Part shown: piece after piece, positions 2,991-25,400 of the stretch
Numbering within the stretch: the stretch's first letter is position 1
Layout of the letters: every line of letters starts with the position of its first letter
DNA from: Phallusia mammillata
Taxonomy: Eukaryota
Reading direction: 5' to 3'
Length of the DNA: 64,000 nucleotides
NCBI GenBank assembly: GCA_965637545.1
Contig: OZ281496.1
Coordinates: 27,776,001-27,840,000, forward strand
Notes under the pieces: generated by a model
Databases searched by the model: none
What the model was told of the DNA's origin: nothing
Seen by the model: only the letters and a program-made list of their open reading frames with translations
Made by a program: the position numbers and the translations under genes

Positions 2991-3986
2991 AATTCCGGAC
3001 CTTTCGCTTTTTGTGTATTTTCTGTTGCGTATTGTGTTGTGTTTTTGCGCCAAATTAATAAATTTTTCTAAAGTGTTTCTTTTCTAACCCCAAGGTGGGA
3101 ATTTTGTATTTGACGATTTTGTAAACATTTTTTCCTTGTGCTTGATAAGTAAGCAACGCTAATCGGTAGTTTTTTTTAATTTTGTATTTCACGAAAAACA
3201 AAAATCATGTCCCTGGGATTTATTTTCAAATCAAAGTGCATGTGTTGTTGCATTGTTTTCACCCTCACCTGAGGAAACTGCGTTCTGTCTCTCTCTCCAC
3301 GCTCCAATTTCAACTTCCTTCAGCACGACAAAATGAACAACTTGTATTTCACGAAAAAACAAGGGTACCGCCCGTATCCTCTGATCCTCAGCAGCGACAT
3401 CCATCGTCGTATTTAACGGGGCCGTTTACTCGGTCACAGACAACCCCTTCTATGCAACAGACCCTGTAAATTGTATTTTGCGAAAAACAACACTCAAATA
3501 CACTTTGACAGCATCGTCGTATTTAGTAGACAGTCCACGAGATGGGGACATTTTAAGCACACTAAGTGTCACGACCTTAGCGAAAAAAACATGTCGTTTG
3601 TTCATTTATCGTCTATGAATTGACCACACAGCGCTAAGTAGCATCAGAGCTCCGTTACGAAAAAATAAGCAGTTAATATTTGACGGTAAATCATAGCTCG
3701 CACCTCAGACAAATTGAAGCTCTGTTACGTAAATTGAGCACCGACACGACGCGAGCGAATATATTACAATTTTAAACATAAACACTTAAAACAAGGCAAA
3801 GGGAAAAAGCATCACATCAGTTACAGCAAATAGTAGTCAGATTGGAGACAACATATAAACGCTAAAATGTTTGTGTTCCGTCACAGTAATTCATCTTCGT
3901 CCACTTCAGCTTTAGTTCTATTTCTGGAAAATAAAAAAGCAAAGCAGCTTCAGGACGTCATTAATGGCATCATATTTTACAAAACA

Positions 3987-4059
3987 TTTTAATACTATAA
4001 CATGTAAAGACAGGATAAGTGCACGTTTAAACTGCCTTTCCATGTTGACATTATCAAAA
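3987..4059 (-). ncRNA. Intronic pre-miRNA-like hairpin, copy 1
   Basis: Minus strand TTTTGATAATGTCAACATGGAAAGGCAG..CTGTCTTTACATGTTATAGTATTAAAA; long stem by manual pairing. Confidence 0.5.
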
Positions 4060-4785
4060 CAACAATTATATTCAAAATTGATGTATAGCAGTTAACATAT
4101 ACTTGCCTGCATCAGTTGGCGAAATTCAGCTGCGGTAGGATGAAGAGATCACCGTAGAAAAAAGTGTTTCCTCCAATGCTGTGGCAGTCCCTGGAACAGA
4201 AACGTAAAACGTAAGATCTCTACGAACTGCCCAAACACTTGAAATATCGCTGAAGGCGAAGCAGCGCAAGCAGAATGGTCTTCATCATTTAATTAATTAT
4301 AATTATTCATCATAAAGTGAAGGTAGCATAGGTAATATTGTTTGTTAAATTACCTGTTTACTGATGAATAAATCGATCCCAGCATTCTTCTTGTGAATGG
4401 AGAGGGCCTTAAGAGCGAAGTTTCTTAAACATATAGAAAAAAAACAGTTAAAGGCGATTTATAGAATGTAACTAAGAGATTGCTAACTTGCATTTAGGGT
4501 GGAGTTTTAGATGCAAACTGGACTCCTTAATGCCTTTGCAACCGCAGTTGTATTCTATGTTGTCAGGTGCTTCGTCGACACTGCAAAACAAACGTTTAAG
4601 CTTCTAGAAGCACATAAGCTTAAATACACAATGAGCGTATAATAATATTTACTTACATATGAAACAATTTCATACGATTTTCCCAATGACTGTCCCATCC
4701 AAAAATCTTCGTCCACTTCAGCTTCAGTTGCTTTTCTGTAAAATAAAAAGCAAAGCAGCATCAGGACGTCATTAATGGCATCATA

Positions 4786-4858
4786 TTTTAATACTAGAAC
4801 ATGTAAAGACAGGATAAGTGCACGTTTACACTGCCTTTCCATGTTGACATTATCAAAA
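4786..4858 (-). ncRNA. Intronic pre-miRNA-like hairpin, copy 2
   Basis: Lies within the 170-nt intron 4736-4905. ~33-bp imperfect stem with an 8-nt loop ACGUGCAC. Confidence 0.55.
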
Positions 4859-5516
4859 CAACAATTATATTCAAAATTGATGTATAGCAGTTAACATATA
4901 CTTGCCTTTATCAGTTGACGAAGTCCGCGGTTGGATGAAGAGATCACCGTAGAAAAAAGTGTTTCCTCCAAATCGATAGCAGACCCTGGAACAGAAACGT
5001 AGATCGTGAAATCTGTACAAACTGCACAAATGGCACAAACAAATCGCCCAAGGCTAAGCGGGGGGCATCCTAAATGGCCTTCAGCATTTAATTAATCATT
5101 TGTCGTAAAGTAAAAGTGGCATAGGCAATATTGTGGGGTAAATTACCTGTTTACTGATGAATAAATCGATCCCAGCAGTCTTCTTGTAAATGGCGATGGC
5201 CTTAAGAGCGAAGTTACTGGAAACTACACACACAAAAACAGTTATAGGCGATTTATAGAATGTAAATAAGAGATTGCTAACCTACATTTGAGGTGGCGTT
5301 ATAGACGACTACAAAAAAGCGTTTAAGCTTATGGAAGCACAGAAGTTTATAAAAAATGTTTACTTACATATACCTAACGACTTTCCCATCAAAACATCGA
5401 AGTTGTTTTTTCAGTTCCGTCACATCTTCGTCCACTTCAGCTTCAGTTGTTTTTCTGTAAAATGAAAAGCAAAGCAGCATCAGGACGTCATTAATGGCAT
5501 CATATTTTACAAAACA

Positions 5517-5589
5517 TTTTAATACTAGAACATGTAAAGACAGGATAAGTGCACGTTTACACCGCCTTTCCATGTTGACATTATCAAAA
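5517..5589 (-). ncRNA. Intronic pre-miRNA-like hairpin, copy 3
   Basis: Same hairpin; an A>G change converts A:U to G:U and keeps the pair. Confidence 0.55.
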
Positions 5590-6316
5590 CAACAATTATT
5601 ATCAAAAATGACGTATAGCAGATAACATATACTTGCCTTCATCAGTTGGCGAAATTCAGCTGCGGTAGGATGAAGAGATCACCGTAGAAAAAAGTGTTTC
5701 CTCCAATGCTGTGGCAGACCCTGGAACAGAAACGTAAAACGTAAGATCTCTACGAACTGCCCAAACACTTGAAATATCGCTGAAGGCGAAGCAGCGCAAG
5801 CAGAATGGTCTTCATCATTTAATTAATTATAATTATTCATCATAAAGTAAAGGTAGCATAGGTAATATTGTTTGTTAAATTACCTGTTTACTGATGAATA
5901 AATCGATCCCAGCATTCTTCTTGTGAATGGAGAGGGCCTTAAGAGCGAAGTTTCTTAAACATATAGAAAAAAAAACAGTTAAAGGCGATTTATAGAATGT
6001 AACTAAGAGATTGCTAACTTGCATTTAGGGTGGAGTTTTAGATGCAAACTGGACTCCTTAATGCCTTTGCAACCGCAGTTGTATTCTATGTTGTCAGGTG
6101 CTTCGTCGACACTGCAAAACAAACGTTTAAGCTTCTAGAAGCACAGAAGCTTAAATACACAATGAGCGTATAATAATATTTACTTACATATGAAACGATT
6201 TCATACGATTTTCCCAATGACTGTCCCATCCAAAAATCTTCGTCCACTTCAGCTTCAGTTGCTTTTCTGTAAAATAAAAAGCAAAGCAGCATCAGGACGT
6301 CATTAATGGCATCATA

Positions 6317-6389
6317 TTTTAATACTAGAACATGTAAAGACAGGATAAGTGCACGTTTACACTGCCTTTCCATGTTGACATTATCAAAA
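6317..6389 (-). ncRNA. Intronic pre-miRNA-like hairpin, copy 4
   Basis: Same hairpin sequence as copy 2. Confidence 0.55.
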
Positions 6390-7045
6390 CCACAATTATA
6401 TTCAAAATTGATGTATAGCAGTTAACATATACTTGCCCTTATCAGTTGACGAAGTCCGCGGTTGGATGAAGAGATCACCGTAGAAAAAAGTGTTTCCTCC
6501 AAATCGATAGCAGACCCTGGAACAGAAACGTAGATCGTGAAATCTGTACAAACTGCACAAATGGCACAAACAAATCGCCCAAGGCTAAGCGGGGGGCATC
6601 CTAAATGGCCTTCAGCATTTAATTAATCATTTGTCGTAAAGTAAAAGTGGCATAGGCAATATTGTGGGGTAAATTACCTGTTTACTGATGAATAAATCGA
6701 TCCCAGCAGTCTTCTTGTAAATGGCGATGGCCTTAAGAGCGAAGTTACTGGAAACTACACACAAAAACAGTTATAGGCGATTTATAGAATGTAAATAAGA
6801 GATTGCTAACCTACATTTGAGGTGGCGTTATAGACGACTACAAAAAAGCGTTTAAGCTTATGGAAGCACAGAAGTTTATAAAAAATGTTTACTTACATAT
6901 ACCTAATGGCTTTCCCATCAAAACATCGAAGTTGTTTTTTCAGTTCCGTCACATCTTCGTCCACTTCAGCTTCAGTTGTTTTTCTGTAAAATGAAAAGCA
7001 AAGCAGCATCAGGACGTCATTAATGGCATCATATTTTACAAAACA

Positions 7046-7118
7046 TTTTAATACTAGAACATGTAAAGACAGGATAAGTGCACGTTTAAACTGCCTTTCC
7101 ATGTTGACATTATCAAAA
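7046..7118 (-). ncRNA. Intronic pre-miRNA-like hairpin, copy 5
   Basis: Same hairpin; G>U variant near the apical stem. Confidence 0.55.
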
Positions 7119-7859
7119 CAACAATTATTATCAAAAATGACGTATAGCAGTTAACATATACTTGCCTTCATCAGTTGGCGAAATTCAGCCGCGGTAGGAT
7201 GAAGAGATCACCGTAGGAACAAGGTTTTTCCTCCAATGCTGTGGCAGACCCTGGAACAGAAACGTAAAACGTAAGATCTCTACGAACTGCCCAAACACTT
7301 GAAATATCGCTGAAGGCGAAGCAGCGCAAGCAGAATGGTCTTCATCATTTAATTAATTATAATTATTCATCATAAAGTAAAGGTAGCATAGGTAATATTG
7401 TTTGTTAAATTACCTGTTTACTGATGAATAAATCGATCCCAGCATTCTTCTTGTGAATGGAGAGGGCCTTAAGAGCGAAGTTTCTTAAACATATAGAAAA
7501 AAAAAACAGTTAAAGGCGATTTATAGAATGTAACTAAGAGATTGCTAACTTGCATTTAGGGTGGAGTTTTAGATGCAAACTGGACTCCTTAATGCCTTTG
7601 CAACCGCAGTTGTATTCTATGTTGTCAGGTGCTTCGTCGACACTGCAAAACAAACGTTTAAGCTTCTAGAAGCACATAAGCTTAAATACACAATGAGCGT
7701 ATAATAATATTTACTTACATATGAAACGATTTCATACCATTTTCCCAATGACTTTCCCATCCAAACAACTTCGTCCGCTTCAGTTTCAGTTGCTTTTCTG
7801 TAAAATAAAAAGCAAAGCAGCATCAGGACGTCATTAATGGCATCACATTTTACAAAACA

Positions 7860-7932
7860 TTTCGATACTGCAACATGTAAAGACAGGATAAGTGCACGTT
7901 TACACCGCCTTTCCATGTTGACATTATCAAAA
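7860..7932 (-). ncRNA. Intronic pre-miRNA-like hairpin, copy 6
   Basis: The 3' arm variant CATGTTGCAGTATCGAAA keeps or improves pairing (C:G, G:C, U:G). Confidence 0.55.
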
Positions 7933-9242
7933 CAACAATTATATTCAAAATTGACGTATAGCAGATAACATATACTTGCCTTTATCATTTGACGAAGTCC
8001 GCGGTTGGATGAAGAGATCACCGTAGAAACAGGTGTTTCCTCCAAATCGATAGCAGACCCTGGAACAGAAACGTAGATCGTGAAATCTGTACAAACTGCA
8101 CAAATTGCACAAACATATCGCTCAAGGCTAAGCGGGGGTACCCTAAATGGCCATCAGCATTTAATTAATTTTTTATTGTGAAGTAAAAGTGGCATAGGCA
8201 ATATTGTGGTGCAAATTACCTGTTTACTGATGAATAAACCGATCCCGGCAATCTTCTTGTAAATGACAAAAAAGGCCTTGAGAGCGAAGTTTCTGGAAAG
8301 TTTAGAAAAACACAGTTAAACGCGGTTTATAGAATGTAACTAAGAAATTGCTAACTTACATTTTAAGGTGGATGCAAACTGGACCCCTTGATGCTTTTGC
8401 CACCGCAGTTGTATTCTATGTTGTCAGGTGCTTCGTCGAACGACTGCAAAAAAGTTTAAGCTTATGGAAGCACAGAAGTGTCTAAAAAATGTTTACTTAC
8501 ATATGATAGATAGTGTTTCATACGATTTTCCCAATGGCTTTCCCATCGAAACAGGGTAGTTGTTTTTAATGCTTCTGATGCTCCGACAAACATCTGCAAC
8601 AAAACTGATATCAGAATTCGGGTTTAACCTAAAATAAGCTAAATACAAGATGTATAACTTCTACCTTTGCTGACCCAATATGCAAACCGCAGTGACATGC
8701 AAAACCGTAAGTGCAACATGCGAAGAACAAGAGGTTTGCTATTCGTTGCAGCAACGGAAAGAATGCCTGCATTGACACGCCTGTAAACAATAAAATTACC
8801 TTCAAATTTTTCGATGTTTTTGAGTTTTTGACGATTCCTTTCTTCTTGAACAAGAGTCACTGAAGAAATAATGCAATTGTAAAACTTTGGCCTTGATGAA
8901 GGCCAAATACAAAGCTTCAAAAATTATAGATTTGAAAAAAAACACAAAACTTACTGAGAAAGACTTGAATTGGTTTTTGCAGGTCTTCCCTCAACGCCAA
9001 CTTTTCTTCACTGCGTGTTACTAAAGAAAGAACGACAAAAGGAAACTTTTGGAAAAATACTAAGCAGCAAGAAAATAAATAGCACCTTGCAAGATCCGAA
9101 TGTGTATTAATTTCGCAGTTACTGAGAAATTATGTCTTGTCAAGATCCAAAGACGCCTGCTTCAGCTTTAGTTGTTTTTCTGTAAAATGAATATCAAAGC
9201 AGAATAAGGACGTCATTATTTGTATCATATTTTACAAAACAT

Positions 9243-9313
9243 ATTCATATTACAACATGTAAAGACATGATAAGTGCACGTTAAACTGCCTTTCCATGTT
9301 GACATTGTCAAAA
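9243..9313 (-). ncRNA. Intronic pre-miRNA-like hairpin, copy 7 (diverged lower stem)
   Basis: Upper stem retained, with several mismatches in the basal stem. Confidence 0.4.
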
Positions 9314-9971
9314 CAACAATTATATACAAAATTGACGTATAGCAGTCAACATATATTTGCCTCCATCGGTTGACGAAATTCAGCCGCGGTAGGATGAAGA
9401 GATCACCGTAGGAACAAGGTTTTTCCTCCAATTCGGTAGCAGACCCTGAAACAGAAACGTAGATCGTAAAATCTGTACAAACTGCACAAACATATCGCTC
9501 GCTCAAAGGTAAGCGGGGTGCACCCTGAATGGCCTTCAGCATTTATTTAATCATTTGTCGTGAAGTAAATGTGTCATAGGCAATATTGTGGGGTAAATTA
9601 CCTGTTTACTGATGAATAAATCGATCCCAGCGGTCTTCTTGTGAATGGAGAGGGCCTTAAGGGCGAAGTTTCTGGAAAGTACAGAAAAAAAAACAGTTAT
9701 AGGCGACTTATGGAATGGAACTAAGAGATTGCTAACCTACATTTAAGGTGGCGTTATAGACGACTACAAAAAAACGTTTAAGCTTATGGAAGCACAGAAG
9801 TTTCTAAAAAATGTTTACTTTCATATACCTAATGGCTTTCCCATCAAAACATCGAAGTTGTTTTTTCAGTTCCGTCACACCTTCGTCCACTTCAGTTTCA
9901 GTTGTTTTTCTGTAAAATTAAAAGCAAAGCAGCATCAGGACGTCATTAATGGCATCATATTTTACAAAACA

Positions 9972-10044
9972 TTTTAATACTACAACATGTAAAGACAGGA
10001 TAAGTGCACGTTTACACTGCCTTTCCATGTTGACATTATCAAAA
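9972..10044 (-). ncRNA. Intronic pre-miRNA-like hairpin, copy 8
   Basis: Same hairpin; the CATGTTGTAG variant adds a C:G pair. Confidence 0.55.
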
Positions 10045-13000
10045 CAACAATTACATTCAAAATTGACGTATAGCAGTTATACTTGCCCTTATCAGTTGAC
10101 GAAGTTCGCGGTTGGATGAAGATATCACCGTAGAAACAAATGTTTCCTCCGAATCGATAGCAGACTCTGGAACAGAAATGTAGAGCGTGAAATCTGTACA
10201 AACTGCACAAATGGCACAAACATATCGCTCAAGGCTAAGCGGGGTGCACCTTGAATGGCCTTCAGCATTTAATTTATTATTCATCTTAAAGTAAAGGTAG
10301 CATAGATAATATCGTTTGTTAAATTGCCTGTTCACTGATGAATAAATCGATCCCAGCAGTCTTCTTCTGGATGGCGAGGGCCTTCTAGCGCAAAGTTTTC
10401 TGAAAATTCTGAAAAAAAGTACCCTAAATGGCCTTCAGCATTCAATTAATCATTTATCGTGTAGTAAAATTGGCATGGGCAATATTATAGGAAAAATTAC
10501 ATAAAATAATAACGTTTATCCTAGACAAGTGTCTTGCCTCTCAAGTTTGTTTACCTGTATATAACATTCCAACGTATGAACCTAATTCCTTCTCGGCATT
10601 TGTTGGCTTCGATACAGGAGAAACGTTGATAAAGAAACGTCTGCAACGAAAGAATCAGGTTTGTACAAACATAATTAAGACTAAACTACAGTTAATTGCT
10701 TAGTGTTATTTATTTAATTGTGGAGATTTCAAACCATGTTGACAACCGAAATATCAGAATGTGACATGCCAAACATGACGTGCAACATGCCAAATCACAA
10801 TGCAAAAATAGAACATTTACTATACTACATGTCTGTCCTATCCTATCAGTCGCCGATTGTGCAGCCGATGCCGAAGTCAACACCAAACATACGTCTTCTT
10901 TGATCGCCCAAGTCTTCACCACGAGGTACTGCAAAAAAAATGGCATATAGCTTTCGGCCCATAGCAAACCAACACCAATGATAAGCTATAAAAAATACTC
11001 AAAACTTGGACATTGTAATCGAGAAACAAATTCAAAGACTCGACTTTTGCAGAAAAAAAGCAGTAAGTTTTCAATAAAGAAAATTACCTGATATTTTTCG
11101 CCGTATAACATCTGCTGTGGGCTTTTTGCATCACCAACTGTTTCACATCGTTAACTGTTCTTTGGCACAATTACCTAACGAAAAAATGACAGATAGCAAA
11201 CAAGCACGTACAAAAATTAAGCAGCAAAAATATGTATTACACAAATGACAGTAAACTTGTCATTACTGAACAAACAAAGAATTTATCAATTATGTGTACA
11301 CATTCTCATGAACAAAACTTACAGACGAGCTGGTGTGACTCGTTTTCGAAGTCTCTGATGAATGCATGCCTCGTTAGGTCACCATCAAGTTCGTGTGTAG
11401 CAAACGAACCTTTCTTTTCCGCTGCTAAGTAATTTTTGGTCGCCTCTTGCCGCCGCTTGTCGTCATGAATTACTAAAAAGGACTCTGATAAGCCCTGGTG
11501 CATAAAAACTTCAAAACTATACAATACGAAACGTTACAGTAAACTTACAGGGGAGATCAAATGTGAAGTCTTCCATGAACGCATGCCTTGCCAATTCCCC
11601 GGCTGCCTGTTGCCCAAAATCACACCGGTTTAAATTAAAGCAAACAAAACTTGTTTAACTCGCCTGTGCAGGTTAATGTTGGTCCGTCATCACAATAAAT
11701 CCAATATTGCGGCAGGCGAAAGGGATTTTTCGTGGAACCTGGAACAAAATGACCCAACTAATTTATCCAAACATTCCAAACAACTTTTTTGTATGCCGGT
11801 GCGTAAGCAACTTAGTGGCCACCCATGTTGATCTCTGTACTCACACCGAACAAGTTCGCTAATAAACACGTTACCTGCATCTTTCACGCTGTATATCATT
11901 TTCGATCGTCTCCAATAGCCAAGCCTTTTTCACCATGAGTTACTAAGGAAAGAATGACAGATTTATAGCCTAAAAACATATCAACCAAACACCAAAAAAC
12001 AAGCTAATACAAAGAGTAACAGTAAAAATTTCCGAAACTTTGCATTACAAAACAGATAAAACTTCCATTAATGTCTGGAAGATATTTAAAAAACCCAGTA
12101 ACACAACTTACAGGCGAATAATTACGTGATTTGGTTTAGCAGCTATATCAGACAGTCACTGATAAAGTGGTGCCTCGTCCTAACCTGCTAAGCTCTTGGT
12201 CAGCGCTCCGATATTCGAAGGTCCTGAAGAAAAATGAGCGTTAATTCGGCAGGACCCCAAGTTGAAACATTGTTTACATACATTTGTCACATACGGATAT
12301 GCATTGGTTTCTCCACTGCTCCTCCAAGTTTCGATAGATTCGAGTTTCGATGGACACAAATCTGCAACAAAACTACAGCAGAAATTGATGTACAAACCTA
12401 ATTACAATTAATTGCTTACTGTCCTAAAACACACGTGGCATGCAAAACATGAAGTGCAGCATGCAGAGCAATAGTGTTTACCATGCTGCAACTTATCGTT
12501 GTCTATGGTTCCGCAAATGTTTACTCCGTGAGACTTAAAAACCAGGTTTACTTAACTTTATCTGTTTGAAATTCCGAAGTATTTTCCCTTTTGGTCTCCA
12601 ACTATACGATCCATGTCTTGGTGCCTTCCTGTAAAAACAAAAACAAAAGCAGTACTAAAGTACGCAACACACATTACTAAATCTAACTTATTTATTATAT
12701 AATATATACGTATGTACTCATGCTCATGCTGACAACTCGTGTGACACGCACCATGCCAAATCACAATGGAAAATTAGTAGGTGACGTGTAACATGCCAAA
12801 TCCACATACTCTATTCGCCAATTATGGGGCCAAGTTTTTAGGCCGTGAAAAAATGTTACTTAACTTCATTCAGCCGGACTAAAATTTTCGTCTTGACTCC
12901 ACGCGACTCGCTGACTTCCTGTAAAACCAAAGCAAAATCAGTACCAAGAAACACAACACAATATTTGACTTAAGTGATACTATAAGTTTTGATTAACATG

Positions 13001-13601
13001 TGAATATATATGTAAACGATATACTATTTTCACATGTTTGTGACTGAATCTAAGCGGTTCAATGCAGGGATTGAATTTTTGAAAATACTCGCCTGCTCGA
13101 TTGTTGTAGCCATGTTTCTTTAATTTGACTGTTTAATGATTATTGGATGCACGAAAATCCAATCAAAACCTAAAACAAAACAATCCAACAGCTGTACTAT
13201 GTATTTGGGAAGCTACGCAAACTTATTTACTACATTTCAATCCGATATCGGTGTAAAAACCAAGTTTAATTTCACATCGGTCCCGACTAAATTTATTTTA
13301 CTTCGTAATAATGAAGTTACCTGCAGATCTCCTTCGCCCGTCCACTTCCGACACTTTTTCTTTTCCTTCCGCCAACAAGAACGTTCGCCTTCCAAACGTC
13401 ACGCGAGTGTTATTTACCCGTCACCAGTTTGTCCGCAGGAACTAAAAAGAATCAAAGTGACAAACATTAATTGTACAACTTCACATCTCGAACACCTTTG
13501 GACAGTGGTTTATGTTGTTCCTGACTTACAATAACAAGAGTAAATATAAAATTGTAAGACACGTATTAAATAAATTTTGCTAATAAATTAACTTTTGCTT
13601 G

Positions 13602-13668
13602 CCAACCTAAGGTTCGAACCTCAATCCTTAAATTCTTTGTACAGCATCTGTACCACTACACTGTGTGT
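13602..13668 (-). mobile_element. tRNA-derived SINE-like remnant
   Basis: Minus strand carries an A-box-like TGTAGTGGTA and a B box GGTTCGAACC; no complete cloverleaf. Confidence 0.35.
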
Positions 13669-14277
13669 GACAATGGTTAAACGTTCCCAAAGTTTTAGTT
13701 TTCTACGTTTAATTGCTGATAGCAGTTGAGGCAGTGGCAATGCAGATAAGTTGTGTCACTGACGGTTGTGGCTCAGGTTTTGTCTAAGAGGGGAATATTT
13801 TTGCTTTTGTTTTTAAGAAACTCACTGAACTATTTCTTTGTCTTTGTTCAGCACTGTTGCAGTGGTCTTTCCAAAACAGGTGGGTTTCTCCTGAAATTTA
13901 TTCAAATATTAATCATTGTAGGCTACGGACTGAAGGAATCAGTTAAACTCTTTGCATGTGATTTTAAACGTGTGAAGTTAAGGATATGTACACGTTAAAC
14001 TATCTTCACATGTTCGTTACTAAATTTAGGCGATTCATATTAGGTATTGAATGAAAATATTTACATGCCTGCTTGATTCTTGTAGTCATGTTTCCCCCGT
14101 TTAACTGTTGATTGATTATTGGATGCACAAATATCCAAACAGAACCTAACACAAAACGATCCAACATGCAATTAGGAAAGCTACGAAAATCTATTGAACA
14201 TATTGTTTTCCGGTATAGACACAGTAACACACAAGTACATCGATACCGATAAGTCGACTTAACCATAACGAAATCAC

Positions 14278-14390
14278 CTGCAGCACAGCACGCAAGTTGA
14301 ACAGCCACCCTCAACGCGAGCAGGAAAAGAAAGAACGACCGATTGCACGCGCCTGAAAAATTTGGTCTCACATGATACCGTTCAATCACA
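14278..14390 (-). promoter_or_regulatory. Candidate TCT/TOP-like start and first exon (paralog of 27124-27290)
   Basis: Minus strand GGTCGTTCTTTCTTTTCCTGCTCGCGTTG...TGCAG|GTGATT. TTCTTTCT fits the YYCTTTYY TCT motif, and a CAAT-like element lies upstream. Confidence 0.4.
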
Positions 14391-15524
14391 GTGCATTACC
14401 CGGGTGTTCGTCAATTGTCCAAAGGCAGGCATTGTTGCGTGAGATAGCAAGTCCTACAGAAACAATATTTTGTAAATATTATAGTATACGGCGACAGGTA
14501 TAAAATTGTGCAGCCATAGATACCCTAGTTTTGACTCGAGATTATTGGCGGTGTGTTGCACTATATAGTATATGACAGCATTGGTCGAAGCTTCCGCTGA
14601 AAAACATAGAAAAATAAGAAAACTTAATATTCGACTTCCGGTAAACGATAGTGCCTCTTTTAAGGTTGTTTAACTTACATTTAACATTTTTCAGTATGAA
14701 TCTAGTTCATGCAGGTTTTGATGGTTTCTAGAAGCTTTGATAGACAACCTCTGCAACATAACGTAGTTATTGAGAAGACACGGCGATTTAATTACTACTG
14801 TTGTGTTCACAGGTTTTATTCTGTCTACTCACAATCAAAACACACGTGACATGCTCACACAAAGTACAGCATGCAACATCACCTTGCAAAACTACGATAT
14901 TCGCTATAATACAATTATACAACTAGGTCGCTAATCGGCAAACCATTAAAAATTTAAACATAAGGTTAACTTAACTTCTTTAATAAGTGTTTTCCAGTTG
15001 AGTTCTCTTAAGTTGTTGGGGTAACACTTTCTACCTTGTTGCCTCGCGCTTTTCCTCCGAAACTGAGAAGTTAAGAAATTGTCCCGTACAGATTGGCTTT
15101 TCCTGACATGTTCGATTAGTCGTTTAGCAAAAATTAGGAAAATCCGGTGAATGCTTCGATCTGTGAATTAAAAAGGTTAAGTATTGTGCAACCTTACTTT
15201 TCCCAGTGAGTCTAACACTAGTTTCCACCAACCTGTGAAGGTTTTATCTGTTGACCAGAAATTCCTACTGTTCTGAAAGACAGCACTGGTCTGAGTTTCT
15301 AAACTAAAGCATAAGCGATAATTATTCTCGGCAAGTGATCGGAGGTTGTACTTACATTTGGCAGTCAGCATATAATCAGATTTTTATGTGGCTTTCACAG
15401 GTTATAATTCTTCGGAGAAACGTTGATAAATAAACACCTGCAACAAAATACAAAGCAGCATTGGATGTACACACATAATTGACACTAAATAACAGTTAGC
15501 TAGCTACTAAAATACGCGGAACAC

Positions 15525-15724
15525 NNNNNNNNNNNNNNNNNNNNNNNNNNNNNNNNNNNNNNNNNNNNNNNNNNNNNNNNNNNNNNNNNNNNNNNNNNNN
15601 NNNNNNNNNNNNNNNNNNNNNNNNNNNNNNNNNNNNNNNNNNNNNNNNNNNNNNNNNNNNNNNNNNNNNNNNNNNNNNNNNNNNNNNNNNNNNNNNNNNN
15701 NNNNNNNNNNNNNNNNNNNNNNNN
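15525..15724. other. Assembly gap (200 N)
   Basis: Run of N. Confidence 1.
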
Positions 15725-16440
15725 CAGTCAACCCTCCAGAGACCAAAGGCTATCCATTTTAACTCAAGTGATGACCTTCATAATAACCAATCAGCTTTTT
15801 AACAGTTAAGGCTTTGGGGATGTTCAGTAGGATAGGAAAATGGCAGCGTGGTAAAATACAAATCTCTTGAGAGATGACCTCACCATTGCTACTGGCACCA
15901 AAAGCACTTACGCCCTGCCGCAGAGATAAAAGTTTGTGAATGGCAGATGTGCGATAATTGAGCGCCTTAAACAATTGGCAAACAAGCCTTGTGGTCTTGT
16001 AATGAGACATTCTGCATGGAAGTGCACTTGGGTAATAATAGTTTCTGAATTTAGGTTTAGTTAACACTTTTAGTTGTTATTCACAAACACAAGCCCAACA
16101 TTTTTAAACTTTTTTACCCTTGCAGAAGCCTTAAAAAAAATATAAAAAAAATATCCAAAAACCATATGCCACATATTTCTCATTTCTAGATAGTTGATTG
16201 TATCAAATACACGGCTAAACAAAATAATAATTATTAGACCAGTGTGTAAACAATAGTCCTCATTTGCAACATTTGATGGAATTTTAGAGTTGTGCTCGGC
16301 ACAGGAGATTATTGCACAATTTGTGTCATTTTTTCTAGCAAACCCCTTTGAGACCATTGTGGTTAAGAAACACTGCACTAGCCAGCAATATGCTGAGAAG
16401 GATAATTTTAACGAACACATGCATGATATAGGACTGAATA

Positions 16441-16623
16441 CAGTAAATCTCTGTTAACCTGGACACGTTTGGACCAAACAATTGTCTGGATTAGGTAAAG
16501 ATCCGGATTAATTGATGTCAATTACTTAAAGCCTTACCACATTAAAAATCATTTGTGTCTCGAGTTTGTCAGAATTAGGCGAAGATCAGGATTAACAGAA
16601 CCCGGTTTAATCGAGATTTTCTG
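16441..16623. mobile_element. Tc1/mariner (pogo/Tigger-type) MITE
   Basis: TIRs CAGTAAATCTCTGTTAA / rc CAGAAAATCTCGATTAA (14/17 match), flanked by TA on both sides. Confidence 0.7.
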
Positions 16624-16826
16624 TAGTTGCATCAGTATTAACTGAACTATCATAAATCTGTGCAGTTAAAAAATCAACGCACATGATAAAAAAAGGGTGA
16701 TTATGTCTGACACTGTGATTAAGACTTTTCAAACACAATCATTGACACAGCCAGCCAAAGCTTAGTTCATGTTGCAATTAATCATACAAAGTAAATGTTA
16801 GTTTTTGGTTTAAGGCAATTACCCAC

Positions 16827-18893
16827 CTTAATAACTTCGTTAACATTAGCCTGGCATGCAACCTGATCGCAGTTGTCAGGCACTGGTAGGAGGGTAGGAC
16901 CGAAACATACCGCTATGTTGTAAGCGTCCATCATATTTTCATCGCTGTTCTGCGACAAACTGAGCAAACAAAATGACAAGTTACTATCTTTGATTTCAGG
17001 TAACATACACATGTTTACATACATTTTCCATGAACTAGTAAGTACTGAAGCTAAGTTTACTATACACTTTGATAAAATAGGCTAGTGATGAATGACTTCA
17101 CATTAAAGTTTACAGTCTATACTTATTTTCTGGTGACTCATGATTTTATTAATACTCATTTACACATTATAAACAGTTTGACTAATATTGACTTATCTAA
17201 TGTCATGTGATGTTTCAGTTAAATCCAACGCTTTATAGGAAACTATTTAATTAAAATTTAAAAATGTGATTAGCATTATCAATTTACATGTATTTTATTA
17301 TTTCTTACTGACACAACTTTTTGCAAACATTTTCTATGAGCCAGGACTGTTTTGTTATTTTATGTATTTTCAAAAATGAATCCACTCTATTTTAATCTTG
17401 GCACTTTTACTAAAATTTCTTGTTTTATTGAAGGCTATAATTTTGCCAGCTAGGGCTGTTGTCAATATTACAGACCACAAATTTGAAACAAAGTTAATAT
17501 CTTACTGGTTTAGGAAGGCAAATAGATATCGCATCACAATCAAGACTGACTCAGGAATGTTGAGAATGATTTGTCGGATTTTTGTCACCCTCTCTTCAAT
17601 GTTGCTAATATCTAAAGAAAAAATTGTTTAAAAATCAGTTAACCACACAAAAACGAAGAAAATTCGACTTTATATTCCACCGACTTATAGAAACATTTCG
17701 GCAAAAACTAAAGAGGTCCTAGTAAAAAAAAAATTTGTTGACAAATTTTAAACTAACTTTTTCCACAATGATCACAGTTATTTTTACATATTTATTTCGA
17801 TCACATACTACTGTGAAAAACAAAGTTAAAAAACCTACGTGCACATTTTTCAAGGTCTTCAAAAATATATTGTGGAAATAGCTTCTCATCTAATTGTCTG
17901 AAATACAGCTTAAGTAATCCTGCAACTGAATTAATATCTGCGTCATCTTCTCGTTCACTGATGGGATCTTCACCAGCTTCGAATAGTCCTTTCATCTCAG
18001 TTATTTCCTGTACAAAATGACAAGGCTTTAATATACTTAATCAACATTGCCGCATGTTGATTAAATTATAGGATAGGGTTACCAGACGCCCAGAGATGTC
18101 CGGAATTCCGGCATAAAATCTGTGACTTTTAAATACACTTGTAATGTCCAAAAAACTGGTAGCCTACAAGTTTTCAAAGTGGCCGAAATTTGCTGGTGTG
18201 ATTCAAGCAAGAGGGAAAATGCCTTATCCTGTTAATATTCAAAACCGATTGATTGTTTTTTCTTTATTTTTAGTGTACACGGATGTTTAAAGCGGTTTAC
18301 AGTTACTGTCGTCTGTGCGGTTTTTGATACACGGTTGTATCAAACACAATATGGCGTCAGTTTAGTATCAAGTAAGGTATTTATTGAAATTGTCAGGAAT
18401 TCAGCCCACTCAGATATGTTAACTGTATTAAACCATTCTATGAATATAGATTATTGATTAATGTACTGATGCTCAAACTTATGCTTGCAGCAGACTGACA
18501 AATATTGTTTTGATTACAAATTTGCTGACCAAAAACAGCACAGTTATATTCAAAGAACTAGATGTACATCAAAATAAACGCCACACCACAAAAGTATTAG
18601 TGCCACAAGAATTAAAATCATTATTCTACCACAAAAAAGTTTTTTCAACACATAGCTTTTTAATTTTGTAAAAATTACAAGGTTTTGCTAAGTTATCGGT
18701 TTATGGTTTTCGCCTGTGAAAAATAATTTAACTGTATTTAAAATTAAAAACCAGCAATTAATTTCTAAATCTTTACACAAATGCTAACCTGGTGTGAACC
18801 AGGAACTCGAAAGATGCCCTGATGGTGAAGGCCGTACAAATTAATGATACGAATGCAACTTTCGACGACAAGTGGAATCGAACGACCAGATTC
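16827..18893 (-). CDS. SRGAP: SLIT-ROBO Rho GTPase-activating protein (SRGAP family), RhoGAP-domain exons only; partial gene
   Basis: Four in-phase GT-AG exons 18789-18893, 17839-18007, 17506-17611 and 16827-16959. They translate to ESGRSIPLVVESCIRIINLYGLHHQGIFRVPGS..GEDP..DINSVAGLLKLYFR..LIVMRYLFAFLNHLSQNSDENMMDAYNIAVCFGPTL..DQVACQANVNEVIK, with the arginine finger intact. No flanking F-BAR or SH3 exons were found. Confidence 0.9.
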
Positions 18894-19439
18894 CTACAAG
18901 TAAGTAGATTGTCAGTACAAGTAAAAATTTGCATAAGGCCTTTACATATGGATGCATAAAGTATAATGTCAATGCAATAGTTGCCAACTTTTTTAGGTAT
19001 ATTAGTCTTATTTAGTATATCATGGTTATAGCCAGGGTTGCCACACCATTCTCATTTATAGGATTTGTCCTTATTTCTAAGAAATGTCCTTGTATGTGAC
19101 TTGGGTCCTTATTTTGTCTTATTTTTAACAATTACAAAACTTCTATCTTGGTAAAATGACAGTCAAATCCCTGCTACAAGTAAAAGTAAACCCTTTGACT
19201 TAAAAAAGGTGACTTGAAAACCAGTTTCAAGCCATGCAATATCAGATAAGTAATCTATGCATTTTGAAATATTTAACTACTTTATGCATCCAATACATAT
19301 TATTTTTTAACAATATATATATGTATATGGTACAGATTTTATTTCTCAAAAACGTTGTTAGGGTCAGTGTACACGAAGTGCAGAATTTTTCTGGGCACAT
19401 ACACTCATGACATTTCACACGAAAATGCATTTTTGTGTA

Positions 19440-22400
19440 ACGTTTGATTTGTCCTGTAATTATTGGTAAGCGGTTACAAAAAAAATTGGGAAATCCTGTG
19501 TATGGTGAAACAATACTTTATGACATACGCACTGTTTGCACTAACCTGTTAAGGATCTGTGGGTCAAAAATCCCGACGATCCTGCAGGACAGCAAATGTC
19601 AAGGCTCTATAGGAAAATATTTAAAATTGGCGATGTTTATAGAAAATACTGAACAGGCGTTTCGTCCACCAGGTTGCATATTTAACAAATTTGTCGTTCA
19701 ACTGGTGTAATGCTGAACAAAATACGATGTTTGCCTGTCCTTGGCATGCAAAAGGATCATTATTCCAAGCTTGTCTACTTACATCTGGCATCTCTGATAC
19801 ACCGGACTCTTTCACAGCTTATGTAAGTTTCTATGCTTTGAAGAAACATTGAAGAAAAATCATCTAAATTAAACGTTTTGATAAAATGAATAATTTCATA
19901 CATTTGTGTGCCTGCCCTCTTGTGGTAGTTTAGGAAATTGAATTCCACTGTATTGTGCATTTCATAGGGATCTACGACCACAAGAAACAATTTTATTTGT
20001 CCGATAGAGAATGGCTTATATTGCCGTGTTCGGCAAGTCGTTTAAGAAAAACCCGTATATACCGGCCACTGCGGATAAAATGCTAAGCTTTGTGCAGACG
20101 TATACTAGTAACGCTGTTTCGCCCTAACCTGTGAAGGATTTAACTGTTGGTTATGAACAGTTAAATCCAATAAATGCTGAGTCAGACAGAAGTGACACCT
20201 TCTTCTGTTCTTGCTTTACTTCTTTTTTCACCACATTGGGCTTTGGTAGGGATTTTTTGCTTCTAAAACTTTGGAAGCCAATTTTTGGCCGCACTTTGAT
20301 GGGTCTGACTGGGTTTTTCCAACCTTTTCCTTGCTTTCATTTCTGAACTTTTATCACTTATTTTTGGTTTGTCAGTTTGCACAGTATTGCTTGTTTGCAC
20401 AGCACTGGTCAAAGTTTCTAAAGGAAAACATTAACGATAGTTATTCTCGGCATCCGTTGCTCAGAGATTGTTTACTTACATTTTGCATGTAAACACCTCA
20501 GTGACTTTTGTAGGTGCCAGTCCTTCGTCGAAACTTTGGTGAACAATCTGCAACAAAACATATAGCAGCATTCGATGTACAAACGAAACTGATACAAAAT
20601 AACGGTTAGTTATCGTTGCATGTCCTATTGTTAGAACACACGTGACATGCAAAAAAGTGCAACATGCCAAATTGCTGTGCAAAAAGTAAATCCTCATTTT
20701 TTTAAAAGTAAACAACTAGGTCGCTGTTTATGTGGCAAACCATTAAACTAAAAAAAGGTTAACTTAACTTTAATGGCTTCGTAGCCCGATCGTACTGCGA
20801 TTTTCCAAAGAAAATAAAAGCCCTTTTCTCGTCTGTAAGGTTTGATTTGTCCTGTAATTATTGGTAAGCGGTTACACAAAATCACTAAAATCCTGCATGA
20901 GCTGAAAAAATACTTTTATGACATACAGCAAAAGCTAACATTGTGCAGCCGTGATTGATATTTTTAGTCAAGGTTATTAGTAATCTGGTGCTGATTCCAC
21001 CAACCTTCCTAGGATTTGACTTGTTGGTCTAGGATCCCTACGATCTTGTTAAGTCATCACAGGTCCAAGTTTCTGAAGGAACACATGAGCGATAATTATT
21101 CTTGGCATGCGACAGAAGGATCGTTGCTCCAAAGTTGTCTACTTACATTTGGCAGTCAGCATATAACCAGATTTCCATGTGGCTTTTGCAGGTTCTAGTT
21201 CTTCGCAGAAACTTTGATGAAGAAACGCCTACAACAAAACGCAAAGCAGCAATCGTTGCACAAACCCAACTGACACTATACAACAGTTAGCTAGCTTCAC
21301 ATGTCTTATTGTGCGTACTAATATTCGGAACAAATGTGACATGTAAATCAACATGCAAACTATAAAGTGCAACATGCCAAGTCACCATGCAAACTATAAA
21401 GCTCGCTAAACTACAACTTAACAACTAGATCGCTGATTAAGTGGCAACCCAAAGCCATGAAATGGTAAAAAGTCAGATTAACTTAACTTCGATCGGTTGG
21501 AAGTCAGGCGGTATTGCAATTAGTGGGCTTTCTGCTGAAACTACAAGAAAACATACACTTTGTTTGTATAGCTTAGCATGTATGATTATTGGTAAGTTTT
21601 CTTACATAATAAGAAAATCCTGTTTATGCTGAAACAAATATTTTCACGACATACATCAAAAGCTAAAAATAGTGCAGTCTTAGTTATGAGCAAGATTACT
21701 GATACTGACTACTGTTGCACCAACTTGCAAAGAATTTGACTTGTTGGTCAAGAATTCCTACGATCCTGCAGGACAGCACAGGTCGATAGTTCTGAAGGAA
21801 AGATACAAAAGTAGCGATATTTAGCATTCTTATCGGCACGTGATAACGACATTTACTTACTACAAACATGTACGCATAAGAACCGAATTTTTCCACTGCT
21901 TTTGCAGGTTTCCATGTTTCGTAGAAACTCTGCAACAAAAAGTAAAGCAGCATTCGATGTTCAAACTTAATTCAGACTAAAGAACAATTAGTTGACTAAA
22001 GGTAAGAACACACGTGACATGCAAAACACAAAGCCAAATCAGCATGCAAAACTGAGATTCTGACGACACTACCACAACTACTAAAGTATATAAATCAACC
22101 CTAAAACCAAAGTTAACTTAACTTCAATCGGTTTGGCTCTGAATTCCGTCTTGGCTCAGCATCTGTCGAGGTCTATAGTGGAAAACGTTAGCGATAGTTA
22201 TTCTCGGCATGCGACATAAGAATCGTTGCTCTGAGGTTGTCTACTTACATTTAACCGTCAGCATATAACCGGATTGCTCCGTGGTTTTCGCTGGTTCCAG
22301 TTCTTCGTCGAAACTTTGACGAACATTCTGTAACAAAACATAGGGCAGCATTCGATATACTAGCACAACTGAGCCCAAATAGCAATAAGTTAGCTTCGAA

Positions 22401-25400
22401 TGCCTCACTGTGCTGAATAGTCAGAAGGCACGTGACATGCAACACACCTGGTGCAACATGCCAAATTGTAAATCTACTAAAAATTATCAACTAGGTCGCT
22501 GCTTATGCAGCCAACCCAAAGCCATGAAAAGTTAAAAAAAAACAGGTCAACTTAACTTCAATTGGTTCGAATTTAGGCCATTTTGCACCCATGTACTGCC
22601 CATTTCCGCGGAAACTAAAAAACATACATTTAGTCTGTATGACTTGACTTGTCCCATAACTATTGGAAATCTCCAGGGTCGATGACTTACATCTAACATA
22701 TCCGCGTATGAACTGCATTCCTCCAGTGCTTTCACAGGTTTCCATGTGATTTTGATCATTCGGAAAGTTGGTTAAGAAAAAATCCTGTATGTGATGCCCA
22801 CTGCGAAAAAAAAACTAATCATGTGCAGCCTTACTTATCTTAGTTTTGTCTTACATTTTGAGTCTACAATAGTGTCGCTGCTTTGTTGGTGCGAGATTCC
22901 TACGCTCCTGTAAGTCAGCAATGGTCGGAGTTCCTGAAGGAAAACATTAGAAATAATTACCCTCACTATGCGAAAAGGATTTGAAATTGTCTACTAACAT
23001 TTGGCGGCAAGCATGTAACCGGATTGCTCCTTGGTGTTTGCTTGTTTCAGTTCTTCGTAAATGTTTCCATGAACAAGCATCTGCAACAAAACCTACAGAA
23101 ACACTCGATGTACAAACCTAATTGCGACTAATGAACATTTAGTTAGCTTTACTTGATATGAAAACACACGTGACATGCAAAACAAGAAGTAGAACATGCC
23201 AAATCACCGTGCAAATCTGCAAGTCTCACCATACTGATTATATTTAACAACTAGGCGATTATGTGGCAAACTTTTTAAAAACCAGGTAACTTAACTTCAA
23301 TCCGTTCGAATTCGAAGTCAGGTCGTATTGCATCAATTAGTGCGCTTTTCCGCGGAAACTAAAAGAACAAGCGTTTTGTCTGCAGATCTTTGCTTCATAA
23401 TTTGCTAATACACTATAATCATTGGTAGGTGGTTACATAAAAAAATATTGCATGTGCTGAAAGAATACTTTTATGTCACACAGCAAAAGCCTAGTATTGT
23501 GCAGACGTAATTGCGCTAAAAAAAAACTCTATATTACTGGTGCTGTTTGTGACCTGTAACGGATATGACTTTTGGTCAAGGCTCTCCACGATCCTGCAAA
23601 ATAGATGAAAATTAGCGATATTTTCCTATCGTTGGCATGAAGCTCTTATCTATACTTACATTTAACACGCAACTAACCGAAACCCTCCATTACAGGTTGC
23701 TTTTCTTCGTAGAAACATCTGCAACAAAACGTAGAGCATGCTGCAGCATTCGATGTACAAACCTAATTGACACTAAAACTACAACTTTAGTTACGGTCAG
23801 AACACACGTGACATGCAAAACGCGATGTGCAACATGCCGAATTACCGTGCAAAATTTCGATTCTCAGCATACTAAGATTTAACAACTAAGTTAGTTCGCT
23901 TGTTGTGCAGCAAACTATATTTAATCTATAGAAAGCTAAAATCAGGTTAACTTAACTTCAATTGATTTGAAGTCTGGTCGAATTTCAGCAATTAGTGTGC
24001 TTTTCCGAGGAAACTAAAAAAACATTTGTATGTGGAGCTTGGCTACTAAGTCCTGTTTTGTTGAAACAATACTTTTATGACACATACAAAAAAAATAAAC
24101 ATAGTGCAGCCCAAGTCTAGATTACAGGCGCTGTTTGCACTAACCTGTCGAGGATTTGACTTGTTGGTCAAGGGTCCATACGATCCTGTAGGACAGCACA
24201 GGTCGAAAGTTCTAAAGGAAAAGATACACACGTAGCGATATCTAACCTTTTTCTCGGCACGCGACAACTACATTTACCTTCTACTAACATGTACGCATAA
24301 GACCTGAATTCGTCCAGTACTTTTGCAGGTTTCCATGCTTCGTAGAAACTCTGCAACAAAACGTAGAGCATGCTGCAGCATTCGATGTACAAACCTAATT
24401 GACACTAAAACTACAACTTTAGTTATGGTCAGAACACTCGTGCCATGCAAGTCACAATGTGCAACATGTCAAATTACTATGCAAACTATAATGCTCGCCA
24501 AACTACAGCTTAAGTAAGTGGCTGATTACAAACCCTGTAGGCTATGACAAAATCAGGTTAACTTAACTTTTATAGTTTGAAGTCAAAAGTATTTTCTCGT
24601 TAAGGTCATCCATCATGTCTAGATGTTTTCCTAAACATAGAAAATCAGATGAAGAGCTAAGAAACGCAATACGCAGTAATAGATCTAGCTTAGGTGTAAT
24701 CAACAATCGGAACACACGTGACATGCCAAACACATAGTGTAACATGCCAAATCGCCGTGCAAAACTGAAATTTGTAATACTCCTAATACTACATGTTAAC
24801 AACTAACTCTTAGTCGCCAATTAAATGGCCAAGTCATTACGAAGCGAAAAGCCTAGAAACCAAAGCAACTTAGCTGAATCGGCTTGGCTCAAAATTCCAT
24901 GTTGCATCTCGGATCTAAGCGACTGTTGTGGCGTTCGGAAAACAAAGACAAAGCAGCAGTACCAAGAAACACAACACAATATTTAATTTAATATATACTA
25001 TACGTTTTATATAACACGTAAATTTAGGATATTTTTACATGCCTGCTTGCCCGTTGTAGTTCAGTAAATTTTTATCATGTTCCCGGTTAATTAAATGTTC
25101 AGATAGCGGTTGAACCATCATTGAATGTCCGAAAGTACAAGAGAAACCTAAAACAAAACGATTAACTATCAACTAATTTGCTGTTGTTATATTTACAGGT
25201 TTTTATTATGCTTACTCATAGTAAGAACACATGTGCCATGCAAATCACGCAGTGCAACATGTCAAGTCACCATGCAAACTACAATGCTCGCTATACTACA
25301 ACTTAACAACTAGGTCGCTGGTTATGCGCAAATCGTAAGCCAAAAACAAACAAACAGGTTAACTTAACTTTTATCAGTTTGAATTCGAAGATGTTTTCCA

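What the first reader, a model, noticed from the sequence alone, without database searches (positions are those of the whole stretch)
3987..10044. Eight copies of a pre-miRNA-like hairpin, one per 750-bp monomer
Seen (minus strand): UUUUGAUAAUGUCAACAUGGAAAGGCAGUGUAA-ACGUGCAC-UUAUCCUGUCUUUACAUGUUCUAGUAUUAAAA. Manual pairing gives a ~33-bp stem (UUUUGAUA:UAUUAAAA, AACAUG:CAUGUU, AAAGGCAG:CUGUCUUU, GUAA:UUAU) with an 8-nt loop. It is nearly invariant between A and B monomers whose exons clearly differ. Several variants keep pairing (A:U>G:U, G:U>G:C, U:A>U:G), and the G:U pairs work only on the spliced strand. Established: Drosha substrates have ~33-35-bp stems. Inference: the guide is probably the 3p arm, ~(U)UAUCCUGUCUUUACAUGUUCU. 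I do not recognise it as a known family.
Basis: partly seen in the sequence, partly recalled or inferred. Interest (0 to 1): 0.85.

Follow-up and report, generated by a model that had tools for sequence, protein, structure and literature searches.

The report
Repeated intronic hairpin, possible microRNA cluster
A sea-squirt-like genome carries a recently amplified, apparently non-coding gene whose repeated introns each hold the same microRNA-shaped hairpin, and four older diverged copies keep part of the stem; whether it makes small RNAs is untested.

Summary
Eight copies of a ~73-nt hairpin lie on the minus strand at the stated coordinates, one per 730-814-bp monomer.

- Most monomers are 98-100% identical, so invariance among them says little.
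- Between A and B monomers the whole ~190-nt intron is conserved, not the hairpin alone.
- Inside the array no base pair has changed on both sides.
- About 60 loci in the window hold hairpins of similar strength.

Better evidence is new. Four older, diverged copies and one broken copy lie upstream in the same non-coding-looking region:
- The 5' arm is the conservation peak there (0.94 against 0.51).
- Across old and new copies 90% of stem positions pair.
- Three pairs changed on both sides.

Only the array copies have the basal helix giving a ~34-position, Drosha-like stem.

No match in Rfam or two ascidian miRNA catalogues. No related genome or small-RNA data could be reached.

Best reading (about 0.45): a lineage-specific intronic miRNA-like cluster in a repeated-exon host gene, laid out like C19MC.

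The parts
9972..10044 (-). Hairpin copy H1, an older B-type monomer. Tight stem, MFE -26.5 kcal/mol over 78 nt.
9242..9313 (-). Hairpin copy H2, decayed. About 6 substitutions and 1 deletion; no longer folds as one hairpin (z -0.8).
7860..7932 (-). Hairpin copy H3, the best stem (-29.5 to -30.4 kcal/mol). Carries the U:A>U:G, G:U>G:C and A:U>G:U variants.
7046..7118 (-). Hairpin copy H4.
6317..6389 (-). Hairpin copy H5. A 12-nt deletion lies just 3' of the hairpin.
5517..5589 (-). Hairpin copy H6. Carries the A:U>G:U variant.
4786..4858 (-). Hairpin copy H7. Has the same 12-nt deletion just 3' of the hairpin.
3987..4059 (-). Hairpin copy H8, the last copy, before the terminal exon.
3880..10500 (-). 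Tandem A (about 800 bp) and B (about 730 bp) monomer array. Each monomer has 3-4 short exon-like segments with splice-site-like borders. The hairpin sits 47 nt after an AAG|GCAAGT donor and 50-62 nt before a TTTTACAG acceptor. No open reading frame runs through the array.
26758..26805 (-). Older paralogue O1. A 48-nt hairpin with a 19-bp stem (z -2.7) and no basal helix.
25785..25831 (-). Older paralogue O2. 5' arm is AACAUGUGAAGAUAGU; the stem is partly kept.
13967..14014 (-). Older paralogue O3. 13 of 16 stem positions can pair, but this is not the MFE fold.
12995..13038 (-). Older paralogue O4. Perfect 10-bp stem (z -2.5).
24927..25162 (-). Broken fifth old unit. Profile positions 110-181 are missing, which removes most of the hairpin, including the 5' arm.
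10500..27330 (-). Upstream part of the same-strand, non-coding-looking multi-exon region. It holds the old hairpin units and about 14 copies of a second intronic element. A promoter-like stretch lies at about 27125-27330.

Best explanation
The hairpin belongs to an intron-borne stem-loop family carried by a lineage-specific non-coding host gene of a tunicate, whose exons and introns are tandemly repeated. The last 6.6 kb of that gene was recently amplified as A/B monomers, each with one hairpin in a ~190-nt GC-AG intron.

In these array copies an ancestral ~48-nt stem-loop is extended by a 9-bp basal helix into a ~34-position stem. I infer that Microprocessor and Dicer cut the array copies out of the intron to give ~21-nt small RNAs. 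The duplex would be roughly (U)CAACAUGGAAAGGCAGUGUAA with UUAUCCUGUCUUUACAUGUU(NN). The layout is like C19MC or C14MC and like the young tandem miRNA clusters of Ciona.

Shown here: the copies, the fold, the strand bias, the homology to older copies, and compensatory change in the upper stem. Inferred: transcription and splicing of the host, any processing, and which arm is the guide.
For: Fold and shape:
- Seven of eight copies fold into one unbranched hairpin, z -2.6 to -4.3.
- The duplex region has at least 18 of 21 positions paired, and MFEI is 0.82-1.02.
- The minus strand is about 10 kcal/mol more stable than the plus strand.

Conservation inside the array:
- Between A and B, the hairpin intron has 4% mismatches against 22% in the neighbouring intron (p = 9e-7).
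- The 20-nt 3' arm is invariant in 7 copies.

Older copies:
- A covariance model and nhmmer find four older copies plus one broken copy in the same region.
- In those ~300-nt units (mean identity 0.51) the 5' arm is the top conserved 16-mer, at 0.94.
- With O1-O4 and H1, 90.5% of cells pair against at most 63% when partners are slid. Three pairs changed on both sides (12 of 500 shuffles reach this). Covariation score is 0.193 against 0.114 (3 of 500).

Host gene:
- The exons have no continuous reading frame and no Pfam match, as expected of a non-coding host.

Precedents:
- C19MC-HG has repeated non-coding exons with one pre-miRNA per intron (PMC2691840).
- Ciona has lineage-specific tandem miRNA clusters (PMC2884542).
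Against: - There are no expression data of any kind.
- Fold strength is ordinary here. About 60 loci in 64 kb hold unbranched hairpins with at least 24 bp and MFE of -21.8 or lower. Other windows of the monomer reach z -3.0 to -3.7.
- Inside the array no pair changed on both sides, and the covariation term is +0.24.
- The hairpin is not more conserved than its intron flanks (p = 0.24), and mosaic variants point to gene conversion.
- The older copies have only a 10-19-bp stem and no basal helix. Two of the four are not stable (z -1.0 and -0.3), and in O3 and O4 the plus strand folds better.
- The loop-side stretch CGUGCAC.UAUCC is about as conserved as the arms, which is unusual for a miRNA.
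- The youngest copies have a 5x4 internal loop at the expected Drosha cut.
- No CNNC motif lies 16-18 nt downstream (read from the sequence).
- No match in Rfam or in the Ciona and Halocynthia miRNA tables.
Confidence: 0.45

Rival explanations
1. The hairpin is a structured cis-element of the host transcript. It binds a protein or shapes splicing of the repeated exons, for example by bringing the GC donor and the branch site together, or by pairing between neighbouring introns to skip or circularise monomers. It yields no small RNA.
For: - The whole intron is conserved, not just the stem.
- The loop-side sequence CGUGCAC.UAUCC is kept in old and new copies.
- The old copies are short stem-loops that fit Drosha poorly.
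- The 5' arm is conserved in sequence while the 3' arm drifts.
- The intron has a weak-class GC donor in all 8 copies.
- A second conserved intronic element in the same gene carries GCAUG motifs.
Against: - A 190-nt intron needs no structure to bring its ends together.
- The array copies gained a basal helix that gives exactly pri-miRNA length.
- No binding protein or splicing pattern is known here.
Confidence: 0.25
2. The hairpin has no function. An inverted repeat in an ancestral unit was copied along with the unit. The array is too young to have diverged, and gene conversion homogenises the block around the hairpin.
For: - The youngest dimers are 98-100% identical.
- Variants are distributed as a mosaic across A and B types.
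- One copy is decaying at about the rate of its monomer.
- The hairpin is not better conserved than its flanks.
- Such folds are common in this AT-rich DNA.
Against: - In the old units (mean identity 0.51) the hairpin's 5' arm is the conservation peak, at 0.94.
- Three pairs show changes on both sides, and 90% of cells pair across lineages.
- The hairpin intron is far more conserved than intron 3 of the same monomer (p = 9e-7).
Confidence: 0.2
3. The hairpin is part of another kind of stable intron-derived RNA, such as a snoRNA-like or stable intronic RNA, in the one-per-intron arrangement seen in snoRNA host genes.
For: - One element per intron in a non-coding, repeated-exon host gene.
- A pyrimidine-rich start to the first exon, seen by eye.
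- AUGAUGC and CUGA motifs lie 3' of the hairpin.
Against: - The C-like and D-like motifs are only about 24 nt apart, and no terminal stem is present.
- No ANANNA or ACA box sits after the hairpin (read from the sequence).
- No Rfam snoRNA match even at E up to 10.
Confidence: 0.1

Closest known systems
C19MC and C14MC host genes of mammals (C19MC-HG; PMC2691840)
   Same: Tandem repeat units of a few hundred bp. Each unit has short repeated non-coding exons and a single hairpin in the intron. The amplification is lineage-specific.
   Different: There is no sequence relation, no Alu-type flanks, and the animal is a tunicate. Processing by Microprocessor is shown for C19MC and untested here. Two unrelated-looking intronic element families share this host.
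Ciona-specific tandem miRNA clusters (Ci-mir-2200, 2201, 2203, 2204; PMC2884542)
   Same: Young, lineage-specific tandem duplication of hairpins in an ascidian. The core hairpins are short (~48-50 nt). There is a superficial likeness to mir-2203 around AACAUGU.
   Different: The Ciona clusters are densely packed, about 25 hairpins in 4 kb with no exons between them. Here there is one hairpin per 730-800-bp monomer, with exons. The seeds differ (GGAACAU against AACAUG), and no 10-mer of either arm occurs in the Ciona tables.
Mirtrons and tailed mirtrons
   Same: The hairpin lies in a short intron.
   Different: The hairpin ends are 47 nt from the donor and 50-62 nt from the acceptor, so splicing cannot define the hairpin.
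snoRNA host genes (GAS5, SNHG type; SNORD115/116 arrays)
   Same: A non-coding host with one conserved RNA element per intron and repeated exons.
   Different: No C/D or H/ACA box architecture is present, and there is no Rfam hit.

Membership tests
Canonical animal miRNA (Ambros 2003 and MirGeneDB criteria) | At least 16 complementary positions between the two ~21-nt arms | tested here: met
   Array copies have at least 18 of 21 positions paired. Old copies have 12-15 of 16.
Canonical animal miRNA (Ambros 2003 and MirGeneDB criteria) | A stem of about 35 bp, with a basal stem of about 11 bp below the cut site | tested here: inconclusive
   Array copies have 33-34 stem positions with a 9-bp basal helix, but a 4x3 to 5x4 internal loop sits at the expected cut. 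The four older copies have no basal stem.
Canonical animal miRNA (Ambros 2003 and MirGeneDB criteria) | Reads of 20-26 nt from both arms, with 2-nt 3' overhangs and uniform 5' ends | not testable with these tools
   No small-RNA data for this genome could be reached.
Canonical animal miRNA (Ambros 2003 and MirGeneDB criteria) | Dependence on Drosha/DGCR8 and Dicer | not testable with these tools
   This needs an experiment.
Canonical animal miRNA (Ambros 2003 and MirGeneDB criteria) | Processing motifs: basal UG, apical UGU/GUG, and CNNC downstream | tested here: inconclusive
   Read from the sequence. UG lies at -14/-13 if the cut is before CAACAUGG. GUGU lies near the loop. No C occurs within 29 nt downstream, so CNNC is absent. 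How far these motifs apply in tunicates I recall only from memory.
Any described RNA family (Rfam 15) | Score at or above the family's gathering threshold | tested here: not met
   No hits at gathering score over the whole window. At E up to 10, only chance-level hits.
Mirtron | Hairpin ends coincide with the splice sites | tested here: not met
   Flanks are 47 nt on the 5' side and 50-62 nt on the 3' side.
C19MC-type repeated-exon miRNA host gene | A tandem unit with repeated non-coding exons and one hairpin per intron | tested here: met
   Splice-site-like borders sit at the same places in all monomers, no reading frame runs through, and there is no Pfam match. Transcription and splicing themselves are not shown.
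C19MC-type repeated-exon miRNA host gene | A Pol II transcript processed by Microprocessor | not testable with these tools
   This needs RNA data or a knock-down.
Box C/D or H/ACA snoRNA | C and D boxes with a terminal stem, or a hairpin-ANANNA-hairpin-ACA layout | tested here: not met
   By eye, the C-like AUGAUGC and the CUGA are only about 24 nt apart, and there is no H or ACA box. No Rfam hit.

The most novel reading that the evidence does not exclude
This locus, and by an unchecked first-reader note a twin locus 370 kb away, would be an undescribed tunicate system. Amplified non-coding host genes would carry at least two families of conserved intronic stem-loops: this hairpin and the GCAUG-bearing ~55-nt element. 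These would be processed into a new class of intron-derived small RNAs, or would act together, for instance with the hairpin's small RNA or arm pairing to the CAUGUUG core of the second element.
Probability: 0.12. Interest if true: 0.7.

Novelty: new member of a known kind. Interest (0 to 1): 0.4.

Why it matters
If the hairpins are processed, this would be a tunicate counterpart of the mammalian C19MC/C14MC layout: repeated non-coding exons with one pre-miRNA per intron. That layout would then have arisen independently.

The locus also shows stages of change side by side. Short old stem-loops sit next to young copies that carry an added basal helix and were then amplified. This could show how a stem-loop becomes a Microprocessor substrate. 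It would also add a lineage-specific miRNA family to a group known for fast miRNA turnover.

If the hairpins are not processed, the locus is still a clear case of a conserved intronic RNA structure in a repeated non-coding gene.

Tried and rejected
- Rfam at gathering score and at permissive E-values found nothing.
- Full-text search for either arm's sequence found no papers.
- The Ciona miRTRAP and Halocynthia miRNA supplements hold no 10-14-mer of either arm, nor of the second element. The tables do hold sequences, as a let-7 control showed.
- Ci-mir-2203 looked similar around AACAUGU, but the seed register and the rest differ. I rejected it as a family match.
- GGCAGUG in the 5' arm equals the miR-34 seed as I recall it. 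It lies next to the loop and varies between copies (GGCGGUG, GGCAGUU), so I treat it as coincidence.
- Two metagenome scans for orthologues gave no hits and then 4 chance hits with no 3' arm.
- A protein search with the 142-aa reading frame that runs through the intron was meant to find unspliced gene calls from other assemblies. It found nothing.
- I tried to identify the species through the neighbouring ENPP7-like genes. They are 60-80% identical to Styela clava, Clavelina and Ciona alike, so the species is another tunicate whose genome I could not reach, and no orthologous locus could be fetched.
- I tested the array exons for coding. No frame runs through, exon 3 would be read in different frames in A and B, and there is no Pfam hit.
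- A dispersed transposon origin is unlikely, because no copies lie outside the host region in this window.
Full report
**What is there**

The hairpins lie at 9972-10044 (H1), 9242-9313 (H2), 7860-7932 (H3), 7046-7118 (H4), 6317-6389 (H5), 5517-5589 (H6), 4786-4858 (H7) and 3987-4059 (H8).

They belong to a tandem array spanning 3880-10500, built of alternating A (about 800 bp) and B (about 730 bp) monomers. The one 1382-bp gap comes from a ~620-bp insert in monomer 2, not from a lost copy.

- a 9-bp basal helix,
- an internal loop,
- helices of 6-7, 7 and 3-4 bp,
- an 8-nt loop, giving about 34 stem positions in all.

MFE is -21.8 to -30.4 kcal/mol and z is -2.6 to -4.3. H2 has about six substitutions and one deletion and no longer folds (z -0.8).

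The minus strand folds about 10 kcal/mol better than the plus strand. This confirms that the G:U pairs work on one strand only.

**The setting**

Each monomer has three or four short exon-like segments, with polypyrimidine-AG and GTAAGT-like borders at the same places. The hairpin lies in a ~190-nt intron. That intron starts AAG|GCAAGT, a GC-AG intron, in all copies. The hairpin begins 47 nt after the donor and ends 50-62 nt before the acceptor, so it is not a mirtron.

The exons do not look coding:
- No reading frame runs through the array.
- A and B versions of an exon differ by 1- and 4-nt indels.
- Exon 3 would have to be read in different frames in A and B.
- The conceptual peptides hit no Pfam family.

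Upstream, from 10.5 to 27.3 kb on the same strand, lies a similar run of short, stop-rich exons. A promoter-like stretch lies at about 27.1-27.3 kb.

Earlier notes of this scan point to a tunicate with a Ciona-type spliced leader and a chromosome longer than 23 Mb. The neighbouring ENPP7-like genes are 60-80% identical to Styela, Clavelina and Ciona homologues alike. The species is therefore another tunicate, one that I could not identify or reach.

They are weaker than they look.
1. The youngest dimers are 98-100% identical, so invariance among them carries no information.
2. Between A and B monomers the low divergence is not a property of the hairpin. It covers the end of exon 4, the whole intron and the first 30 nt of exon 1. 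The hairpin intron has 7/166 mismatches against 35/157 in intron 3 (p = 9e-7). Within the intron, the hairpin (1/68) does not differ from its flanks (6/98; p = 0.24). Variants are shared across A and B types in a mosaic, which suggests gene conversion.
3. Inside the array no pair changed on both sides. There are three one-sided transitions, a G:U>U.U change in three copies, and a covariation term of +0.24.
4. The fold is ordinary for this DNA. Other 90-nt windows of the same monomer reach z -3.0 to -3.7. About 60 loci in the 64-kb window hold unbranched hairpins with at least 24 bp and MFE of -21.8 or lower.

**New evidence: older copies**

A covariance model built from the eight copies was searched over the window, as was an nhmmer profile. 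Together they find four diverged copies on the same strand, upstream in the same region:
- O1 at 26758-26805,
- O2 at 25785-25831,
- O3 at 13967-14014,
- O4 at 12995-13038.

A fifth unit at 24927-25162 has lost most of the hairpin, including the 5' arm. Homology runs from the hairpin to the next acceptor.

These copies sit in ~300-nt intron units whose mean pairwise identity is only 0.51. The 5' arm, AACAUGUGAAGAUAGU, is the single most conserved 16-mer, at 0.94.

I aligned O1-O4 with one array copy and counted the 15-pair upper stem:
- 90.5% of cells pair, against 27-63% when partners are slid.
- Three pairs changed on both sides (U:A>C:G, G:C>A:U, U:A>C:G). Only 12 of 500 shuffles reach this.
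- The covariation score is 0.193 against 0.114 (3 of 500 shuffles).

The 11-sequence count agrees. This is moderate evidence, from few lineages, that the upper stem has been kept by selection for far longer than the array has existed.

**Limits of that evidence**

- The old copies are only ~48-nt stem-loops with 10-19 bp and no basal helix.
- Two of them are not stable (z -1.0 and -0.3), and for O3 and O4 the plus strand folds better.
- The loop-side stretch CGUGCAC.UAUCC is conserved about as well as the arms. This is unusual for miRNAs, though it may in part be the seed end of a 3' product.
- The basal helix that gives Drosha-like length is found only in the array copies. It corresponds to partly homologous flanks in the old units.

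**Comparison with known families**

Neither arm matches anything known:
- No Rfam family matches, even permissively.
- Neither arm appears in full-text papers.
- Neither arm appears in the Ciona or Halocynthia miRNA tables.
- A likeness to Ci-mir-2203 does not hold up.

In layout the closest parallels are two:
- C19MC/C14MC, where repeated non-coding exons flank one intronic pre-miRNA per unit (PMC2691840).
- The young, species-specific tandem miRNA clusters of Ciona (PMC2884542).

**Verdict**

The most likely reading, at about 0.45, is a lineage-specific intronic miRNA-like cluster in a repeated-exon non-coding host.

The rivals are:
- a structured splicing or protein-binding element (0.25),
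- a functionless inherited inverted repeat (0.2),
- another kind of intron-derived RNA (0.1).

Which arm would be the guide is open. The 3' arm is invariant in the array, while the 5' arm is the conserved one in the old copies. A shared AACAUG near the 5' end would serve as a common seed if the 5' arm is used.

Nothing about expression or processing could be tested. Small-RNA reads would settle it.

Noticed in passing
window 8721-26557, minus strand (copies starting near 26557, 26291, 25560, 25241, 24747, 23837, 22461, 21377, 20667, 14874, 12796, 12464, 10790, 8721): A second conserved intronic element, GCATGTTGCAC...TTTGCATGTCACGTGTGTTC, in about 14 copies. It carries GCAUG or UGCAUG twice, which I recall as the Rbfox-type motif. 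Its CAUGUUG core is complementary to the hairpin's CAACAUG.
   Followed up: partly
window 12550-26400, minus strand: Many host exons end ...AA|GTTAAGT, an unusual and repeated donor sequence.
   Followed up: no
window 4107, 4906, 5637, 6437, 7166, 7980, 9361 and about 10085, minus strand: The hairpin intron starts AAG|GCAAGT in every array copy (GCAAAT in one). It therefore looks like a conserved GC-AG intron.
   Followed up: partly
window 27125-27330, minus strand; partial duplicates near 14340 and 13400: A promoter-like stretch with two inverted CCAAT boxes and a CTTTCTTTT tract, ahead of a first exon ending TATGCAG|GTAATTC. The duplicates suggest two or three tandem transcription units, each followed by an intron with an old hairpin copy.
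   Followed up: no
window 4165-4248, 4981-5058, 6511-6588, 8053-8136, minus strand: A second unbranched hairpin per monomer, across the intron 3 / exon 4 junction. MFE is -24.8 to -26.5 kcal/mol, as strong as the hairpin under study.
   Followed up: no
window 6120-6209 (also 4589-4629 and 7651-7691), minus strand: A 10-bp palindromic stem, TTAAGCTTCT...AGAAGCTTAA, in intron 1 of A-type monomers (z -3.7).
   Followed up: no
window 692-2858: A 147-bp tandem repeat, 14.7 copies at about 93% identity, just downstream of the array.
   Followed up: no
window about 35000-46500, minus strand: Two or three tandem ENPP7-like (phosphodiesterase) gene copies. They are 60-80% identical to Styela clava, Clavelina lepadiformis and Ciona homologues.
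   Followed up: partly
window 15525-15724: A 200-N gap inside the host region. It was left untouched.
   Followed up: no
window 49487-49702: A 112-bp unit repeated 1.9 times that carries a GGATTCGAACC-type box-B-like motif. It looks like a tRNA-derived repeat, but ARAGORN calls no tRNA.
   Followed up: no
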